From: Oikopleura dioica
Lineage: Eukaryota > Animalia > Chordata
Assembly: GCA_907165135.1 (NCBI GenBank)
Contig: OU015566.1
Span: forward strand, 2,108,001 to 2,172,000
DNA length: 64,000 nt
Direction of reading: 5' to 3'
The notes under the pieces were generated by a model that saw nothing but the letters and a program-made list of their open reading frames with translations, searched no databases and was not told where the DNA came from. The number at the start of each line of letters is the position of its first letter. Within the stretch, counting starts at the first letter, position 1. The position numbers and the translations under genes were made by a program. Below are positions 52,062-61,445 of this stretch, in pieces.

Positions 52062-52988
52062 TTTGTATCTTATCGTACAAAATTAAATGAACAAAACTCC
52101 GGCCACGCTTCTATTTATGTCATTTTTCTCAGAGCGCGCTAGCGAGCACTTGCGCTCGTCGTACCAAAACATGTAATAAGCAAGCAACTGGTTAAAAATA
52201 TTCACTTTGAAGGGAGCAATAACTTATTGCCAATAAGGTAGTATAGTTTTTTAGATAGTATGCAATGAAATTTGGTTCAGGAGTCCTGAATCAGGACCAA
52301 TTATTTTATAATTTGGCAGAATTGGTATGATACCCCTAACTTTAAAGCCTGACCAAGGGGCTACGCCCCAGTCCCCCTTAAGCCTTACCCAAGGGCCCCC
52401 AGTAGGTTTTCTGAATCATAAATAAGGATTTCTGTTTCTTTTGATTAATTTTTATCAAAGATAGTCAGAAATGGTCCCCTTGTTTCTTTGTATTTTGGCC
52501 ATATCTTCTTGTTAACCGAGCGAACATACAATTAAAGGTATCTCTTAGAAACGTCTTAGAAATTTAACATCTAAAAAGATAATTACCTGCCAAAAACATT
52601 TTCTTATTATTGCATATTCTTAAAAATGATAGTAGCTAAATTCCCTACGTTGAGTTATTCTCGGAGGATAAATTTTAGACACCACGTTAATTGGTTCAGC
52701 AATTATCGAATAATTAAAAGAAAATGGTTTGTTTCGATTTTGAACTAGCATCAATTAATCCAATGAGCATAGTTCAATTCCTATTAACGATGCACGTTGC
52801 TAAACATCCACGAGAGAGGATTCGTTTTTAATAGAAACAAAAAATTAGGACAACTACAACTAGCGCTAGATTTTCACAACATCAGCAAGCAAAAATAATT
52901 GAATTTTTAAAGAAAGAATTTATTGAAATTATTTTCAATTTTTTTTTCAGATAGAGAAAAAATCAGTTGAATGTGAGAATAAAATAGT

Positions 52989-54965
52989 TTAATTGATTGC
53001 CAATCGTTCTTCGCATTTGAGTCCTCTGAGGAGACGATTGAAGACTAATTTCGATCGTCTGAAATCGGACTCAATGCTGTCGTATCGTCGTTTTGCTTCC
53101 CTATTTTCCTTGAGCTCAATCAGATCCAAGCAAACATTGTGATCGTAGAATGACATTGTTGATTCCATCAAAGAAATGATGCTGCCGCAAATGTTGCTTT
53201 CATCGATCGTAGGGGCCGTCAATTTTTCGGTGGGGAACTGACTCTGTTGGATAGTCGCAGGAGACAGAGTCGTAAGAATGCTCGTACATCCAGGAGAATC
53301 TGCGAATGACTCGGCTGAATTGCTTCATTTTGAAAGACTGCCTTCTTGTTCCTTCGGCTGTCATAGTCGAGTCGAGAAGTTCGCTCATCGTGCTGTATGC
53401 ATAGACCATCTGATTCGTGTCGGTATCCTCGATTGGTTCTAAGCTTTCAAGTTTGATCTCCGAAACTTCAGTTTCGAGCACTTCTACGTCATCTCCTATG
53501 TTCAGATTTGCGATGAAGTCTTGAACTTCTTGATTCGCAAGGGCGAGGAGTTCCTCATCATCGTCTGTCTGCCTTCTTTTTCTCGCATCTGTCGCTGTAG
53601 CGTTGACCGGGACGAGATAGTCTCGGAAGAAGATGGTAGTGACGAAGGTGTACCAGTGTCCCCAGTTTGTCGGTCGCTCTGTTGCTTCAGAAAACGTCCA
53701 TCTTCTCGTCATTTTTCGCGTTTGAACAGCGCCATTATGTGCGGCGACAGGAGTAACCTCCTTTATAAATGTGTTTAATACGATTGAGATGCGAAATTTA
53801 TTCTTACCCATTTCGTCATTTGTGGATTCGTCGCTCTGAGATAGTCCAAATACCAAAGCGCGTCATCAACTCCAGAAAAGTGGCAGAAAACTTGAGTTGT
53901 TGCTTTACGATCTCTCCAAAGGCGATTCGCCGGGTCGGAAGGGCAGTCTTCTCCGGTTAGCGCTAGAATAAGAGATCAGCTATGATAAAAAATTTTTTCT
54001 TACCATGAGCGAAAATTGTTGGCTCTTCCATCTTGTTTCCTCGAAGATCACAAGATTCCTGGCCTAGAGGAATAAATTTGAATTTGAAACATCCTGGAGT
54101 GTCAACGCATCTAGCTGCACATCTGTTAATGAAGTCGTCTCTATCTTCATCTGGATGTTTTTCAAAGGAGTGCGCGTAGTTCGAAATTGGGACAAGTTTA
54201 TCTACGGACACGGTTTGGCCGTCAAGATTCTGCCAGAGCGGCCAGGTTTTCATCATGACAGACCCATCACTGTTGTATGGAAAGATGCAATCCGGCTCCC
54301 ACTGGTTGGCGCTGCATTCAGAGTCTTCTGGGCGATCTTAAATAATGGTTTCTTTTTCTTTCATTGCATCAGCTGCGTTATTTACTTGGAATGACCAAAA
54401 TCTGGAATCCCTCGTGTTGTACCGATTCGTCAGTAAGGAAAGTGATGCTGATTCTGTTTCCAGGAATGATGACTTCGCTGCCTTCTTCGAGTGCGTGAAA
54501 TCCGATGACTTCCGATGAGTCGCTAGAGGAGTAGGAGTAATAATCGTTGTCATCATTGCAGTAAGTAGCGTTGAAAGTTTCATCTTGAGTTGCAAATGCA
54601 AGGTAGTCCCAAGTGCATCTTGTGTGACCTTAAAAATTTATTTATGCTATAAACTCGATTTTTTTCAAAAACTTACCTTCAATATCGAATTTGATTGTCT
54701 TGATCGTGAAGCTGTCAGCACAGTCATCCTGTAGAAGCCATTCGCAATACGTATTGTCTGGATACACCGTCGCATCGTTTGGATCGGCAGGCGACGTAAT
54801 CTCAAGACTCGTCATTTCCTTGGTGAACTCAGTGACACCCCCACAGTCAAAAAATTCAGTGGAACGACTTTCACCCGAGTCAAAAAACGACCGACCCTCG
54901 GTCTTTTCCTTTTTATCTCGTCTTGCAGAAATAGCAGAGATGGTTAAAAAGCTAAAAACTTTCAT
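52989..54965 (-). CDS. CUB-PAN-like paralogue, copy D
   Basis: Same exon structure and 'RKRRQ' site. The coding sequence appears intact, but the promoter is interrupted at 55042. Confidence 0.85.
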
Positions 54966-55041
54966 TTTGTATCTGATCGTACAAATGAGATGACAAAATT
55001 GAGTATTTCGCTCTATTTATGTGCTTTTTTCAGGGCGCGCT

Positions 55042-58000
55042 TTTTTTTTTTTTTAATATTGAATTTATTGAAGCTACTAATCACGTGGTTAGAAGCTTTG
55101 TACAGGAAATAATAATGAACAGAATAATGTACAAGATATATAAAACAAAAGAGGAGTGTGGGCTTGTGTGGGGAGTGTAGGAAAGTATGAAGGGGACGGG
55201 AGAGAGTGGGTCCTTGTGAAAAAGTGTAGGGCCTGCAACACAGAGCAGTTCTAGTTGTAGAGAGCAAACAAGAAAGGCTCAGCGAAAGCAGGCAACAGGT
55301 AGAGAGTGCCTCCCCATAGGCAGGCAGCTGCCTCCCTGCAAGGATTCTAACGAATCCAGTGCGCTCAACAAGAGCTACTGATGGCCTGTAAGTTACAAGG
55401 ACTTACCAGGCAAATCAGCAGTAACAGTATAAGCCCTAAGTGGACAACACAATAAAAAAAAACGCAATAAAAATAAAAATAATAAATAAAATAAATGGTC
55501 TAAATTATATACCGGGCAAATTAATGATAAAAAATAACTAAGCAAAAAAGTAAATTAAAGTAAAGTAAAAAAAGTAAAAAGTAAAAGAATTGAAAGAACG
55601 AGAGGAGAATAGACGATTGAGAGTTAAAGTAGAAATCAAAGGAAGAGTCTCCTACATAAGTACTATAGTTAAAGCAGTAAGACATGAGCCAGCGGAGTTA
55701 ACTGAATCTAGAGAAGGAGTTATGTTGGGAGGGAACGCAGGAAAAGAAGAGAATAAGAAAAGAAGATGCTGTTTGGAACGTCAGACGTCTTCATTAATCC
55801 CGGATTCGTGCGGCTGAGGCATAGCTACTAAAAGAAGATGCGTATATTGTTAAAAAGTTAAAAAAGTTAAGTCATTTATATACGGAAAATTCGGCTCAGG
55901 AAGACAACTGAGATCGACTTAGCGCCGAGAAACGAGAAAGTGACCAAAATTTTCTAGAATCCACCTGTTTTCATCGCTGAGAATTCATTTCATCGTCAGT
56001 TCAATTTTGGACACTTTCCCAAATAGCGATGTCTTTCATCGCCGATAACTATTTCCAGGTAAGTGGGATGCGTTGATAAACCGCAAAAATATAAGAGAAT
56101 TGTGATGACTCACCCCAGCTCACTGATAAGTGCCTGGCTCCCGTCTCTGAGGAGAGAATCACGTAACTACAATAAACTAGGAGGATAAAAAGAGAGAAAT
56201 CAAGATCATTTTTAATTTCAAGTAGTTTTTATAGTTTTAATAGTTTTTGTGCCATAGTTTCTTGGAATTTCATCCCTTTCCCTTGCGAAACACTACTTAT
56301 TTGAATCATTGCTAGCTACGGCTGATTTCCTTGCGTTTCCTTGGTATTTTTGTTAAGTTCAAAATATCGGGAAACAGTAGTTCTAGAGATTACTACTAAA
56401 TGTTCAAACAACCCAATTTGTATGCAATTTACAATTATTAAATTTGTTGTTGAGCTGCAACAGGGTAATTTTATCGTTTAGGTCTTGGGAGATTTTACGG
56501 AGGAAGAGCTCACCTTCTTCGATTTTTATGGATGGTTTCCAACTCCACTCGAGTTGGAAATCCATTTGCAAGAGAGTTTTCCTGAGTTGCCAAGTATTGG
56601 CACAACCCCCATGGAGCCTGTGGAGTACAGTCGTGGAAAGAAGAAGAACCCTAAAGGACGCCCCACTGTCGCTGATGTACTAAAGGGAGTGGAAAGTATC
56701 AAGATACCCGGACACTCCTCATCCCAGAAGGGTCTTGCAACCATCAGACGACAGAGGAAATCCCAGCGCCTCTTACAACAATCCAAATCGACTGCCGAGT
56801 CCAAGCTCCACCAGAAAAGCCATGAGGATTTGACCGGAAAACCCAACTCTGAGGCAGACACGGACCTGCCTGCTGCTAACTCTGAGGTTGAGATGGAGGT
56901 CGACCAAAAGCAAGGTGAGTCCTTTCTTTACCGACTATACATGGTTGTTGGAAATCGTTAGTCAAGCCTAACCATTTTTAACCACTCTTTTCCTCGTAGC
57001 CGATTTGCCTTTGGAACCCCCCACCGAGCAGGAGATATCAATGGCTGAGGAGACAATCAATGTCTCCCCTTTCTCGAAGGACGAGGCGGAAGAGGGGATC
57101 GACTGTGGTACTGAGCCTGTACGCGCTTTAAAACACCCTGGAATCCCCTTATCTACTACGGAGGGCCATCCGTCGCTTATCTCAGCCGACGTATCATTAC
57201 TGGCTGATCAATCCGAGCAAAGTGAGAATTGGGAGGAGATTCCATCATGGGCTGAATCACTTTATCATGCCTCAGAACTCCTATATTATGTAAGTCTTAC
57301 CGGTCCTGTCGCTTTATAATATATATCTAGAACGGTAAAGTAGAGGCTGAAACCCAGTGCAACATACCTTTACTTCAGGTCTCCTAGTAAGAACAATACA
57401 CCGTTACTAGAAATTATATACTCATAATTCGGTAGTTATCATGATTTCTCATACATTCTTTAGTATCTCCTGGGCGCTACCAACCGCGCACTGCAACACG
57501 ACCCTCAGAAGCAGCGCAGTCTTTATCACTTCTGCGCTAGTCTCATCCCTAGTGTGCTTTCAATGTACGATCCTACCGATGAAGTGACTGCCCGTATATT
57601 ATTACGAAACGTCAAGACACACTTGGTCAATCTCGATGAAGGCACCCCTGCGGAATGGAGACACTTGACTTCAGAAGTCCTTGATTTCATCGCCGCGTTT
57701 CTCACCCGATTTCAAGAGCGAGTGTTTTATCAGCAAGAGGTTGAGGCAACGGTCGATAGTTACAATCGCCTATACAATAGGTAGGTCTTTGCCTAGGTTT
57801 GGAGGCATCTGCCTCCGCTGCCGGAGGCAACCTCATAGTATTTTAAGTTTTAATAATATTTACATTTAACATTTAAATGACACTCATTAAGCTTGAGTCC
57901 ACTGTGCAATGAGTCAGAGCAGGAGTTGTTGATGTCCAACTTCGAGAAAATCTTCACTAAAGCCCCGCTTGAGACTCACTTGAGCGAATCCCTTAGAAAT

Positions 58001-59008
58001 TTACTCTGCTATCTCCTACAGGTAACCTTAGTTAGAACTGCGAAAGTACATAAGTTAGAACCTCTGTAATACTTGACTCTTAGCAACTCTACAGCGTTGT
58101 TTCCTCCTCCATTATAACCCAGATGACTGATAAAATGCCACCGCTGCTCCAGACTTTTGCACTTGTCAATCAATTATTGGATTGTCGAAAGAAGCCAGTG
58201 CCAACCACAATAGATTGGACCACACTCCCTTACCATCTGGAGTACCGACGACAGTATCATACTTGGAAGTTACAAGAGGAGGGCGACTCTGAAGGTGTGT
58301 GAACAATCTTATTATAACTTAACTTAATCTTCCCATGTTGGGAGTATACTACATTTCTTAAGCTACATTTTTAATTTCCGGGCTTTTGTAATATGAAAAG
58401 TATTTTAATTTCAATCTTAATTTTATTCTTTTTTCCATATACATGTATTCAGGTTTCATAGATCCTATTTTTAGCGCCCTCTTGTATTTTATCCCGAGCC
58501 ACCGAGTGTAAAGTTGCCACGCTGCATTCCCTGGAAGTTTATGATCAACTCCGTCAAACCGTCAAGCAAACTCGCGCCGAGGCTCTCGAGAGGGAGAGGT
58601 TGCGCTTGCAGGAGGAAGAAAGGGCACGAGCACAAGCAGAACAGGCCGAGCGTGAAAGAATAGAACAGGCCCAGCGGGAAAGGGATCAGGAGATGAACCG
58701 TGTTATCCCAGGACCCGCTGAGTCCCAATCTCCTGCTCCGGCTCCGGGACATACTACAGAACGAATGGAATCAGACGACGACATAATAGACGTGGTCAAT
58801 ACTCCCGAACCCAGTCCTCAACCAGCTGGAGAAGACTCTAGGCCCTTCGCGCCCTCATCGCAAATGGATTTTGATGCAGGAAGATTTCACGAAGAGGGTA
58901 CCGGAAGTAATTACTCTCAAGCCGGAGCACCCATCGAGTGTTACCTATTAATTGTTCAAGGGGACCGCTCACAAGTTGTACGTCTACCAAATCCACGTAA
59001 GTGAAAAA
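55042..59008 (-). mobile_element. 3.97-kb poly(A)-terminated insertion with a 3-bp GCT duplication (putative 5'-truncated retro-insertion)
   Basis: A minus-strand AATAAA (55064-55069) is followed by a 13-14 nt A tail. Removing the segment restores cagggcgcgctagcgagc, 17/18 identical to the copy C promoter (52130-52147). No RT or transposase ORF is visible. Confidence 0.7.
56029..58996 (+). CDS. Orphan multi-exon gene inside the insertion, apparently truncated at a GTAAGT donor (58997)
   Basis: MSFIADNYFQ|VLGDFTEEELTFF... followed by about 5 more GT-AG exons. Helical middle part, E/R/Q coiled coil (58600-58700) and Pro-rich tail. No recognisable family. Confidence 0.6.
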
Positions 59009-59164
59009 GCTAGCGAGCTTATCGCTCTATTGCGCTAACATTGTCGGAAATATGTTACACGACTCTTTAAGTGAAATACCCTGTAAATGATCTAGGTTAG
59101 CTTTCAGGCAAGTTTTAGTGAGTCGAAGATGGTTGGAGGCCGTTTGCGGCCTTTCCAACAATTC

Positions 59165-59607: not shown

Positions 59608-59700
59608 GCATTAGATCGGATGCCCAGCTAACGGGTTTACCAGTGACCAGACGTGAAAAAAAATCAATTTGATAAAAATTTTTGAAATTCATAATACTTC

Positions 59701-60250
59701 GGGTACGCGTCGTTTGCTACGGTTTGGGGGGTTTGCGTATATTTCTACGATGCGTATATTTCTAGGGTGCGTATATTTCTACGGTCAAAAATGAGTCATA
59801 GGGACCGTAGCAATCGACGCACAGTTTAGGGTGGGCAAAAAGCCGAGTCGGTTTTGTCGGTTATTAATAAAAGTAAAAGAATTTAAAGCTATCTAAGTCG
59901 GTCGGAACGAGTGTCAGGTCGGTTTTCCCTTACAAAAAGATGAATAAAAATCATACTTTGACAATGCTTATTGCACCAAGGCTTAAAATTATTTTCCTTC
60001 ATATTGTTTTCATTTTTGTAAGCGGAAACCGACCAGACACTCGTTTCGACCGACTTAGATCGCTTTAAATTCTTGTAATTTTATTAATAACCGACAAAGC
60101 CGACCCGGCTTTTTGCCCATCCTAAACTGTGCGTCGATTGCTACGGTCCCAGTGACTCATTTTTGACCGAAGAAATATACGCACCGTAGAAATATACGCA
60201 TCGTAGAAATATACGCAAACCCCCCAAACCGTAGCATACGACGCGCACCC
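59701..60250. mobile_element. 550-bp Mutator-like hairpin element with a 9-bp TSD TAATACTTC
   Basis: TSD at 59692-59700 and 60251-60259. GG...CC termini. Inverted arms >200 bp with gcgtatatttcta subrepeats. Internal TAGGG...CCTA module at 59827-60124. Confidence 0.85.
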
Positions 60251-61445
60251 TAATACTTCTACCAATTTTTCGTTATTCCCTTACACTTTGCTCTCTTTCC
60301 AGGAAGAATTTACGATCAGTAACTCAAGCCTCTCTCCATTAGGTAAGTTTGTTCTGTCATTGTGCCCAGTGCCCGAATATGGGTCTTAACCCTAACCTTG
60401 AAAAAGAGCGAAAGAAGCGAACCAACATTTGGAATTTTGATTTCGGATGTTCCGCTTACAAATAACTTGCAGCGAAGAATTACAGATTTCCGTGACAACC
60501 TTTCAAAAGAATTTATCCCCCATTTTCCGATTATACCAGTGGTATAAACTCTTTCGTGTTTTCTAAGCTTTGTTCAATTTAATTTTAGACGCGATTTTAA
60601 TTGATTCGGCATTTTTTATAATTGTCAATTCCCTCTCTTATTGAACAATAGATGAATATGGTTCATCACGTTTTTAACAAGCATCGGTTAATTAAAGGAG
60701 TACGTTCGTTTTTTATTTAATTAACTCTGAGTGCGAAGGTGTACAAGTTTTTAGGCAAAACAACTACCTAAGTGGGACTTCAACAATTAGCGCAAAAACG
60801 AAACGTCGCCAGTTACGATGAACTCCTCAAGCAAACACCTTATCGCTAATGACAGGAAGTTTTATTTTATATTGACAGGGATGTCCATTGTGTTTTTCTT
60901 TGTTGTTCAGAGCGGATTTGGATCACCTTCTGGGCAGCGCCCGCAATTTGCTCTCCATAGCAACCTTGAAAAGTCTTTTCGACTTTTTGAGACTAATTTC
61001 TGATTACAACAAAGAGACCGATTTTCAGATTCAGAAGATATAAATAAAAAAAAGCAGACAACAAAAGTAATTAATTTTTTTTCATTTTAATAAATTTTTT
61101 TTTATTATTTTTTTATCAAAGTTCATCTCGAAAAAATCCGCTTTTGGTAATGTGTTTTTTGAAGGATCATCTTGATTTGCCATAGTTTTTCATTTTAATC
61201 CATTTCCAAACACTTGAGCATCCGTTATCAGATGCTTCTTTTACGCATTATTGACTCTGTCAAAGCAAGAAACTACTGACTAAATAATTACCTGTCAGAA
61301 GAAAGACAGAATCGAGAAAAACTTATTGCTTTCAGTTTTCCCATTCTCGCTTCGATGTCTTATTCCTGATTTTTACAGGAGATTTTTTAAGAGAAAGAGG
61401 AAAAAACTCAAAAAAGAAGGGAAGAAGAAACTAAAAAAAAGAAGG

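What the first reader, a model, noticed from the sequence alone, without database searches (positions are those of the whole stretch)
55042..59008. Poly(A)-tailed 4-kb insertion carrying an antisense, intron-retaining orphan gene, landed ~20 bp upstream of a TATA-like box
Seen: the copy D promoter stops at ...cagggcgcGCT, followed by a T run. After 3967 bp it resumes at GCTagcgagc. The rejoined empty site is 17/18 identical to the intact copy C promoter. The left end is AATAAA plus an A tail on the minus strand. Inside, on the opposite strand, is a ~7-exon gene whose last exon ends at a perfect GTAAGT donor only 12 nt from the right junction, so the gene looks cut off inside an intron. Inference: target-primed reverse transcription of a minus-strand RNA that was 5'-truncated here. 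Introns survived because they are antisense to that RNA. This implies a retroelement, or a transduced transcript, with a spliced antisense accessory gene in its 3' part. Comparable cargo is known for some Penelope-like elements, but I cannot assign this one to any family. A tyrosine-recombinase element with a short core overlap is an alternative. No RT, endonuclease or YR ORF is present in this copy.
Basis: partly seen in the sequence, partly recalled or inferred. Interest (0 to 1): 0.85.

Follow-up and report, generated by a model that had tools for sequence, protein, structure and literature searches.

The report
Truncated LINE carrying antisense spliced gene
This 4-kb stretch is a cut-short copy of a giant (17-20 kb) jumping gene of the tunicate Oikopleura dioica that, unusually, carries a large gene with ordinary introns on its opposite strand, and that gene is conserved across the whole element family.

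Summary
Window 55042-59008 is an insertion into the promoter of a secreted CUB-like gene. The rejoined site matches the intact paralogous promoter. The insert has a 3-bp duplication (GCT), a 13-nt poly(A) tail with AATAAA on the minus strand, and seven plus-strand GT-AG exons. It stops 12 nt into an intron.

The genome is Oikopleura dioica OKI2018_I69. A longer relative on the same chromosome continues the plus-strand gene to 1508 aa. Beyond that gene, on the minus strand, lie three long ORFs. One holds a reverse transcriptase, and in paralogs an AP-endonuclease as well, so this is a LINE.

Four further Okinawa copies and two Bergen-strain copies show the same layout. Sense ORF1-ORF2-ORF3 are followed by a 7-10 kb tail whose only conserved coding frame is antisense, then AATAAA and poly(A). 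The 5' ends vary (about 4, 9.6 and 12 kb, and full length).

Between the window copy and the long copy, synonymous sites are saturated but the protein and the intron positions are kept.

Transduction, Penelope-like and tyrosine-recombinase readings are rejected. The antisense protein has no recognisable domain. No RNA data could be obtained.

The parts
55039..55041 (.). Left copy of the 3-bp target-site duplication (GCT)
   Evidence: The same GCT recurs at 59009-59011. Paralogous promoter C has a single GCT at this point.
55042..55054 (-). Poly(A) tail (A13 on the minus strand), the 3' end of the inserted element
   Evidence: The homologous end of the long copy is A10 (L004 4064-4073). Other family copies end in A15-A17.
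55064..55069 (-). AATAAA polyadenylation signal, 9 nt before the tail
   Evidence: Every family copy with an identified 3' end has AATAAA 5-15 nt before its tail.
55045..55127 (-). Conserved 3'-terminal non-coding block. It includes the palindrome CTAATCACGTGGTTAG (E-box core) at 55077-55092, which folds as a hairpin just upstream of AAUAAA in the minus-strand RNA.
   Evidence: 85% identical to L004 4071-4154, although synonymous sites between the two copies are saturated. Hairpin. The 20-mer is found exactly only at these two loci in the genome.
55320..55391 (.). Second conserved non-coding block, containing the palindrome AGGCAGCTGCCT. It may be a cis element of the element's 3' UTR or the promoter of the plus-strand gene.
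   Evidence: 81% identical to L004 4344-4415. Motif.
56029..59004 (+). Antisense gene, truncated copy (public model chr1.g520, 646 aa). Exons: 56029-56058, 56482-56914, 57000-57289, 57464-57780, 57892-58021, 58084-58294, 58475-58996. The model reads through the last donor to TGA 59002-59004.
   Evidence: Intron positions match the long copy. 39% aa identity to P0015 residues 1-640. No Pfam family.
58997..59008 (+). First 12 nt of intron 7 (GTAAGTGAAAAA), the 5'-truncation point of the element
   Evidence: In the long copy the homologous exon ends ...CCTAATTCTG|GTAAGGAAATCA, and the gene continues after an intron (P0015).
59009..59011 (.). Right copy of the target-site duplication (GCT)
55010..55038 (-). 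Proximal promoter of CUB-like gene copy D. The TATA-like box TATTTATG is at 55014-55021 and the ATG of D at 54962-54964, both on the minus strand. The promoter is now cut off from its upstream part.
59012..59035 (-). Displaced distal part of the copy D promoter (agcgagc...)
   Evidence: Aligns to copy C 52141 onward for about 25 nt.
52128..52147 (-). Intact 'empty site' in paralogous promoter C
   Evidence: 2 mismatches in 20, none expected by chance.

Best explanation
Window 55042-59008 is a 5'-truncated retrotransposed copy of a giant (17-20 kb) AP-endonuclease-type LINE of Oikopleura dioica, presumably of the Odin group.

Full-length members encode three sense ORFs: ORF1 of about 1000 aa, ORF2 of about 1800 aa with endonuclease and reverse transcriptase, and ORF3 of about 650-780 aa. 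A 7-10 kb 3' region follows. On its opposite strand it holds a conserved gene of at least 13 exons and about 1400-1500 aa. That gene's promoter lies in the last 0.5-1 kb of the element and points inward. The element ends with AATAAA and a poly(A) tail.

Mechanism. The full-length sense RNA is polyadenylated at the terminal signal. The element's endonuclease nicks the target, here GCGCGCT^AGCGAGC, 20 bp upstream of the TATA-like box of a CUB-like gene. The T-ended nick primes reverse transcription on the poly(A) tail. Synthesis stopped 3.97 kb in, 12 nt inside intron 7 of the antisense gene. Second-strand joining left a 3-bp duplication.

The introns survive every round of copying because in the RNA intermediate they read as CU...AC, so they are invisible to the spliceosome.

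Shown: the insertion, its ends, the truncation, the family layout, and coding constraint on the antisense frame. Inferred: the TPRT steps themselves; that the antisense gene is expressed and spliced; and that its product serves the element. The protein has an acidic, disordered N-terminal half with a charged helix and a conserved, Cys-rich C-terminal half of about 600 aa. Its role is unknown.
For: Insertion and empty site.

Genome identity (O. dioica OKI2018_I69, chr1).

Long colinear copy with the same poly(A) end, with the gene continuing past the window's cut.

Minus-strand ORFs of 783, 1832 and 1073 aa beside that gene, with RVT_1 in the 1832-aa ORF. Exo_endo_phos plus RVT_1 in paralogous ORF2s. 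Distant hits are APE+RT LINE proteins.

Six more family loci in this genome.

In the 3' regions of copies a, b, c, d and ref, translated similarity lies on the antisense strand. There are 0 sense HSPs in all pairs except the two closest: c-d (16 antisense / 7 sense) and ref-window (17 / 10).

Conserved Cys exon followed by an intron at the same place; a canonical GTAAG donor in four of the five lineages, while copy a would need a non-canonical GTGCC.

AATAAA plus A10-A17 lies 7-8 kb after ORF3 in copies ref, b, c and d; a less certain A9 end lies 9.8 kb after ORF3 in copy a.

The same layout occurs in the Bergen strain: L034 has T-run/AATAAA, gene, ORF3, ORF2; L033 is cut just upstream of ORF3.

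Window versus long copy, 218 ungapped codons: pN 0.38, pS 0.85, third-position identity 0.32.

The window exon model is identical to public model g520.

The antisense genes are annotated as 1408-1520-aa proteins.
Against: No RNA evidence was obtained.

Target-site duplications of the full-length copies could not be identified. Their 5' boundaries are set by ORF1, not by junctions.

The AP-endonuclease domain was detected by Pfam in copies a and e but not in the long 'ref' copy.

No close source element of the window copy exists in this assembly. The nearest relative is 39% identical in protein.

Copies e and f of the RT family show no detectable homologue of the antisense gene.

Sense-strand AATAAA hexamers are not depleted in the 3' region. 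How the sense RNA reads through 7 kb is unexplained.
Confidence: 0.88

Rival explanations
1. One-off 3' transduction. An ordinary LINE read through into a neighbouring host gene lying in antisense orientation, and the window holds a retrocopy of that read-through transcript. On this reading the gene is host cargo, not part of the element.
For: LINE 3' transduction is well known (own knowledge). In the long copy a second sense-strand AATAAACTCAAAATAAAAAAG lies about 400 nt after ORF3. It resembles the terminal signal and could be the 'native' end.
Against: The same gene sits at the same place and in the same orientation, before the terminal poly(A), in at least five anciently diverged lineages of the Okinawa genome and two of the Bergen genome. 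Any capture must therefore predate the family's radiation and has been kept since. The window and the long copy share a constrained terminal block.
Confidence: 0.04
2. DNA-level event. The 4-kb piece is a segmental duplicate or a double-strand-break filler copied from a paralogous locus, and the T-run is incidental.
For: Only two loci in the genome carry this N-terminal gene part. The duplication is only 3 bp.
Against: The piece begins exactly at a pure 13-nt tail preceded by AATAAA. That is the same terminus as the homologous element end 12 Mb away and as all family copies. No DNA-level source exists in the genome: the nearest copy is saturated at silent sites.
Confidence: 0.03
3. A Penelope-like or tyrosine-recombinase (DIRS/Crypton-type) element with accessory cargo, as the first reader offered as comparison or alternative.
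For: Both kinds occur in O. dioica and can keep introns (PMC8008620; scan note s1-363072, unchecked by me).
Against: The linked ORF2 carries RVT_1 with Exo_endo_phos upstream of it. No GIY-YIG or recombinase family was found in ORF1-3. The nearest database proteins are APE+RT LINE proteins. The ends are a poly(A) tail and a variable 5' cut, not repeats.
Confidence: 0.01
4. This is an addition to the main reading, not a replacement. The truncated gene g520 has been kept by the host as a new gene (exaptation). That would explain why 644 codons and all splice sites are intact although no close source element remains.
For: The reading frame is open across seven exons and all sites are canonical. 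It is annotated as a gene. The source lineage is absent from the assembly.
Against: The pure A13 tail and the perfect duplication point to a young insertion, which explains the intact frame without selection. The conserved C-terminal half of the protein is missing. O. dioica elements are known for low copy number and fast turnover (PMC4122922), so a lost or unsampled source is unremarkable.
Confidence: 0.12

Closest known systems
AP-endonuclease non-LTR retrotransposons (LINEs); in O. dioica the Odin group (Volff et al. 2004, cited in PMC4122922 and PMC8008620)
   Same: ORF2 has an Exo_endo_phos endonuclease followed by RVT_1. The 3' end is a poly(A) tail after AATAAA. 5' truncation is variable. 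The target duplication is short. Copy number is low and lineages are very diverse.
   Different: The element is 17-20 kb, against the usual 4-8 kb. It has a third sense ORF after ORF2. Its 7-10 kb 3' region holds a conserved antisense gene of about 1400-1500 aa with at least 12 introns. I found no description of such a gene in the papers I could search. The original Odin paper was not available.
Human L1 antisense promoter and ORF0 (own knowledge: Denli et al. 2015)
   Same: A LINE that also encodes something on its antisense strand.
   Different: ORF0 is a short, primate-specific ORF in the 5' UTR that splices outward into host exons. Here the gene is large and internal to the 3' region, has many exons, and is conserved across the family.
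Antisense genes of retroviruses and LTR elements: HTLV-1 HBZ (spliced antisense mRNA) and antisense ORFs of plant Tat/Grande-type Ty3/gypsy elements (own knowledge); extra ORFs captured by bdelloid LTR elements and Athena/Terminons (PMC5408684, PMC8557442)
   Same: An accessory gene is carried by a retroelement. Because it is antisense, its introns escape splicing of the genomic RNA.
   Different: Those are LTR/retroviral or Penelope-like elements with other replication modes. None is a poly(A)-tailed LINE, and their antisense ORFs are much smaller.
Engineered retrotransposition indicator cassettes with an antisense-oriented marker gene (own knowledge: Heidmann, Boeke, Moran)
   Same: The same strand logic applies: whether an intron is removed from the copy depends on its orientation relative to the element RNA.
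   Different: In the cassettes the intron is sense to the element, so it is lost on copying. Here the introns are antisense, so they are kept. This case is natural, not engineered.

Membership tests
AP-endonuclease non-LTR retrotransposon (LINE) | Reverse transcriptase domain in a long sense ORF | tested here: met
   RVT_1 at E 3.5e-21 in the 1802-aa ORF of the long copy and E 1.2e-14 in copy a. The window copy itself lacks it because of truncation.
AP-endonuclease non-LTR retrotransposon (LINE) | APE-type endonuclease N-terminal to the RT in the same ORF | tested here: met
   Exo_endo_phos in copy a (residues 449-642, before the RT at 953-1254) and in copy e. It was not detected in the long 'ref' copy at E <= 0.01, although that ORF aligns with copy a's fused ORF1-ORF2 (which holds the endonuclease) over ref residues 101-1331.
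AP-endonuclease non-LTR retrotransposon (LINE) | Poly(A) 3' end without terminal repeats | tested here: met
   AATAAA plus A10-A17 in the window, ref, b, c, d, L033 and L034. Terminal repeats were not searched for exhaustively.
AP-endonuclease non-LTR retrotransposon (LINE) | Copies share the 3' end and have variable 5' truncation | tested here: met
   Window 3.97 kb. L033 about 9.6 kb, with no ORF2. Copy d starts near ORF2 residue 822. Full length: ref, a, b, c and L034.
AP-endonuclease non-LTR retrotransposon (LINE) | Target-site duplication flanking the insertion | tested here: inconclusive
   A 3-bp GCT flanks the window copy. No convincing duplication was found for full-length copies.
Odin clade of O. 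dioica LINEs | RT groups with Odin reference sequences in a phylogeny | not testable with these tools
   No Odin reference sequence or Repbase entry was reachable, and the describing paper is not held. The assignment rests only on Odin being the LINE group reported from this species (PMC4122922, PMC8008620).
Penelope-like elements | PLE-type RT with GIY-YIG endonuclease | tested here: not met
   The endonuclease is Exo_endo_phos. No GIY-YIG family hit was found in ORF1-3.
Tyrosine-recombinase elements (DIRS/Ngaro/Crypton) | Tyrosine recombinase ORF and characteristic terminal repeats | tested here: not met
   No recombinase family was found in any sense or antisense ORF. The ends are a poly(A) tail and a truncation point.
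Processed retrocopy of a host mRNA | Intronless copy in the sense orientation of the gene, with the poly(A) at the gene's 3' end | tested here: not met
   The copy keeps six introns. Its poly(A) tail lies on the other strand, upstream of the gene's ATG.

The most novel reading that the evidence does not exclude
These Oikopleura LINEs are truly two-stranded retroelements. The antisense, intron-bearing gene would be an element-encoded factor that the element needs, for example for its ribonucleoprotein, for nuclear entry, or to blunt host silencing. It would be expressed from a promoter built into the element's 3' end. It would be passed on with its introns because the copying RNA is its antisense. 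That would be the first LINE lineage with a conserved multi-exon accessory gene, and a natural route by which intron-containing genes are duplicated through RNA.
Probability: 0.4. Interest if true: 0.85.

Novelty: new variant of a known kind. Interest (0 to 1): 0.72.

Why it matters
LINEs are usually seen as minimal two-ORF elements, and retrocopies as intronless. This family breaks both habits. It is 17-20 kb long, has a third sense ORF, and carries a conserved gene of about 1500 aa with at least 13 exons on its antisense strand. That gene is copied with its introns every time the element moves.

Three consequences follow:
- It gives a natural system to ask what an accessory protein can do for a LINE.
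- It lets one ask how convergent transcription inside a retroelement is managed.
- It shows that RNA-mediated duplication can create new intron-containing genes. The truncated copy here is already annotated as host gene chr1.g520.

All this occurs in one of the most compact animal genomes, where such bulk should be strongly selected against.

The finding also matters for annotation. At least five 'genes' of the public O. dioica annotation are parts of this element family: g520, g3838, g3839, g5074 and g13923. A sixth, g13223, has no reverse transcriptase nearby, so its tie to an element is unresolved.

Tried and rejected

Function of the antisense protein:
- No Pfam family on single exons or on the public full-length models.
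- A profile of the C-terminal 600 aa found nothing in the PDB.
- The ESM Atlas feature search gave no usable hit.
- AlphaFold2 on a 6-sequence alignment gave mean pLDDT 42. This is too poor for a fold search, so none was run.
- The profile search of 1.84 billion proteins found only seven relatives. Five carry Oikopleura dioica names; the other two, a Logan and a JGI/IMG record, have no organism label.

Other sequence searches:
- ORF2 gave no PDB sequence match.
- ORF1 and ORF3 gave no Pfam family.
- Target-site duplications of full-length copies: only chance-level 7-8-mers.
- DNA-level comparison among family copies: all are saturated except one 63% stretch between copies c and d.
- Depletion of sense-strand AATAAA in the 3' region: none, 40 sense against 43 antisense.
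- The GGCA-N-TGCC palindrome is not a family-wide feature.
- A third locus with the terminal palindrome (C1:10076233) lacks the T-run and is probably chance or a fragment.

Literature: the Odin description (Volff 2004) is not held. Searches found no report of an antisense gene in a LINE.

Joined exons: I sent no self-joined exon model to any search or fold tool. The joined sequences used there were public models returned by the databases (P0015-P0024). Local scripts joined the seven window exons only to count stops and to test identity with P0024.
Full report
**1. What is in the window**

The sequence shows the promoter of a minus-strand gene. This is copy D of a four-copy secreted CUB-like family (copies at about 41.1-43.2, 43.7-45.9, 50.1-52.1 and 53.0-55.0 kb). 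The promoter runs ...TATTTATGTGCTTTTTTCAGGGCGCGCT and is then interrupted.

After GCT (55039-55041) come 13 T (55042-54), AATATTGAA, and TTTATT (55064-69). On the minus strand this reads AATAAA, 9 nt, then A13. At the other side the sequence reads ...CCAAATCCAC|GTAAGTGAAAAA (to 59008), then GCT (59009-11), then AGCGAGC.

With one GCT removed, the rejoined 20-mer occurs once elsewhere in the window. That site is the homologous point of promoter C (52128-52147; 2 mismatches, none expected in 100 shuffles). It sits in register with the aligned TATA-like box. Promoter similarity fades about 25 nt beyond the junction, so the junction and its register carry the argument.

The insertion is 3,967 bp, with a 3-bp target duplication.

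**2. The plus-strand gene**

Seven exons are all bounded by AG/GT and give 644 open codons. They lie at 56029-56058, 56482-56914, 57000-57289, 57464-57780, 57892-58021, 58084-58294 and 58475-58996. The last exon ends at a GTAAGT donor 12 nt before the junction.

Reading through that donor gives RK-stop at 59002-59004. This reproduces the public gene model Oidioi.mRNA.OKI2018_I69.chr1.g520 exactly (646 aa; P0024). No minus-strand ORF longer than 111 aa lies in the insertion.

**3. Origin of the window**

The database names and contig sizes identify the genome as Oikopleura dioica, assembly OKI2018_I69 (PMC8008620). The window is chr1:2,108,001-2,172,000.

**4. A longer relative**

A DNA search of the whole genome found only one other locus, chr1:14.130 Mb. 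It shares the first 83 nt after the T-run (85% identity) and a 72-nt block 280 nt further in (81%). It begins the same way (...GCGCGCCGA-T10-AATATTTGAGTTTATT...). At the protein level it is colinear with the whole insertion.

Intron positions coincide. Over 218 ungapped codons pN is 0.38 and pS is 0.85, with third-position identity of 0.32. Silent sites are therefore saturated while the protein is kept.

At the point where the window copy stops, the relative has the same exon end followed by an intron and six more exons. This gives the 1508-aa public model chr1.g3838 (P0015). The TGA at 59004 is an accident of the truncation.

**5. What lies beyond the gene**

About 500 bp past the stop codon of g3838, on the minus strand, lie three long ORFs of 783, 1832 and 1073 aa. 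The 1832-aa ORF has a reverse-transcriptase domain (RVT_1, E 3.5e-21). Its distant database relatives are LINE proteins with AP-endonuclease and RT domains.

Six more loci in the genome encode 22-35% identical ORF2s. After fetching them, all but the 5'-truncated copies d and f show ORF1-ORF2-ORF3 in a row; those two keep ORF2 and ORF3 only. Pfam finds Exo_endo_phos upstream of RVT_1 in copy a and Exo_endo_phos in copy e. ORF3 is weakly conserved among a, b, c, d and ref. The family is an AP-endonuclease LINE.

**6. The antisense gene belongs to the element**

I compared the 3' regions of copies a, b, c, d, ref and the window in all six frames. Similarity lies on the antisense strand, with no sense-strand hits except frame shadows in the two closest pairs.

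A Cys-rich exon (invariant C, R, C, C, G, C, G) is present in five lineages. It is followed by an intron at the same place; four lineages show a canonical GTAAG donor, while copy a would need a non-canonical GTGCC.

7-8 kb after ORF3, copies ref, b, c and d end with AATAAA, 5-8 nt and A10-A17, followed by unrelated flank. Copy a has a less certain end (AATAAA, 15 nt, A9, within tandem repeats) 9.8 kb after ORF3.

A profile of the Cys exon, searched against 1.84 billion proteins, found seven proteins. Five carry Oikopleura dioica names: the public models for ref, d and a, one more Okinawa model, and one Bergen-strain protein. A sixth, an unnamed Logan record, clusters at 90% identity with a second named Bergen protein (P0022). 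The seventh is an unnamed 58-aa JGI/IMG fragment.

Both Bergen loci repeat the layout. A T-run with AATAAA on the other strand lies about 500 (L034) and 780 (L033) bp upstream of the ATG. Past the gene lie minus-strand ORF3 and, in L034, ORF2. L033 has ORF3 but nothing of ORF2. Copy d starts in the middle of ORF2, and the window copy is the shortest. This is the pattern of shared 3' ends and variable 5' ends expected of LINE target-primed reverse transcription.

**7. Mechanism**

- *Shown:* an insertion bounded by a poly(A) tail and a short duplication; a cut inside the element; homologous full-length elements with endonuclease and RT; and an antisense gene that travels with the 3' end.
- *Inferred:* the endonuclease nicked GCGCGCT^AGCGAGC; the T-ended nick primed on the poly(A) of a sense RNA spanning the whole element; and cDNA synthesis or joining aborted after 3.97 kb.
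- *Intron retention:* the introns are kept because they are antisense in that RNA. This follows from the strand logic of splicing and needs no special assumption.
- *Terminal block:* the constrained terminal 83 nt include a palindrome (CTAATCACGTGGTTAG) that folds as a hairpin just before AAUAAA. They may be the RT's recognition element or part of the antisense gene's promoter. With two sequences I cannot tell which.

**8. What the antisense protein does is unknown**

It has an acidic or S/T/P-rich, fast-evolving N-terminal half with an E/R-rich helix. Its C-terminal half of about 600 aa is conserved and has Cys/His clusters. Pfam, a PDB profile search, the Atlas and a structure prediction (pLDDT 42) gave nothing.

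Its retention with open frames of 1400-1500 aa, in lineages whose DNA no longer aligns, argues that the element needs it. I put that at about 0.4-0.5.

**9. Rivals**

- A recent 3' transduction is excluded by the family-wide conservation. An ancient capture is compatible with the main reading and is in fact likely as the origin.
- A DNA-level duplication is unlikely. The piece starts exactly at the family's poly(A) terminus, and no DNA donor exists.
- Penelope-like and tyrosine-recombinase elements fail their domain tests.
- The truncated gene may since have been kept by the host. That is possible but unnecessary, because the pure tail suggests a young insertion.

**10. Limits**

- No transcript data were available.
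- Junctions of full-length copies are undefined.
- Membership in Odin is untested.
- Copies e and f show no homologue of the gene.
- Two further relatives of the gene have no RT nearby, and I could not fetch their surroundings.
- I sent no self-joined exon model to any search or fold tool. Only public models returned by the databases were used there.

**11. Verdict**

The element is a giant AP-endonuclease LINE with a conserved, intron-bearing antisense gene. As far as the papers I could search show, that architecture has not been described for LINEs.

Noticed in passing
window 59698-59938 and 60013-60253: A 241-nt inverted repeat, 93% complementary, with 74 nt between the arms. It lies about 700 bp to the right of the insertion. 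It could be a MITE-like or hairpin element.
   Followed up: no
L005 1031-1050 (G000:C4:14137031-14137050), minus strand: About 400 nt after the ORF3 stop of the long copy lies a second sense-strand AATAAACTCAAAATAAAAAAG. It resembles the terminal AATAAACTCAAATATT-A10. This hints at short (ORF1-3 only) and long (genomic) sense transcripts.
   Followed up: no
G000:C1:16987045-16990035 (-) and G000:C5:3581483-3584610 (-); loci L035, L036: Two further relatives of the antisense gene: public model PAR.g13223 (P0020, 858 aa, ending about 40 aa after the Cys exon) and a paralog. Neither has a reverse-transcriptase hit nearby or an A-run within 1.5 kb upstream of the ATG. They may be decayed truncated copies or domesticated genes.
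   Followed up: partly
L005 1435-3768 (-) and homologues in copies a-d, L033, L034: All family members have a third sense ORF of 627-783 aa after ORF2. It has no Pfam family and only 20-39% identity between lineages. This is an undescribed LINE ORF3.
   Followed up: partly
G000:C4:14136000-14149000 (public models chr1.g3839 = P0002): The public annotation strings pieces of the LINE's ORF2 and ORF3 into one 1186-aa 'gene' with invented introns. Several annotated O. dioica genes are parts of this element family.
   Followed up: partly
window 55322-55333 and 57803-57814: The palindrome AGGCA-NN-TGCCT occurs twice in the window, both times inside the insertion (0.01 expected). It recurs in the long copy but not in other family members.
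   Followed up: yes
window 55400-56000: The roughly 600 bp between the conserved terminal blocks and the ATG are strongly purine-rich on the plus strand (GC skew +0.24, AT skew +0.25 for 55001-56000). They contain A-rich GTAAA-type repeats.
   Followed up: no
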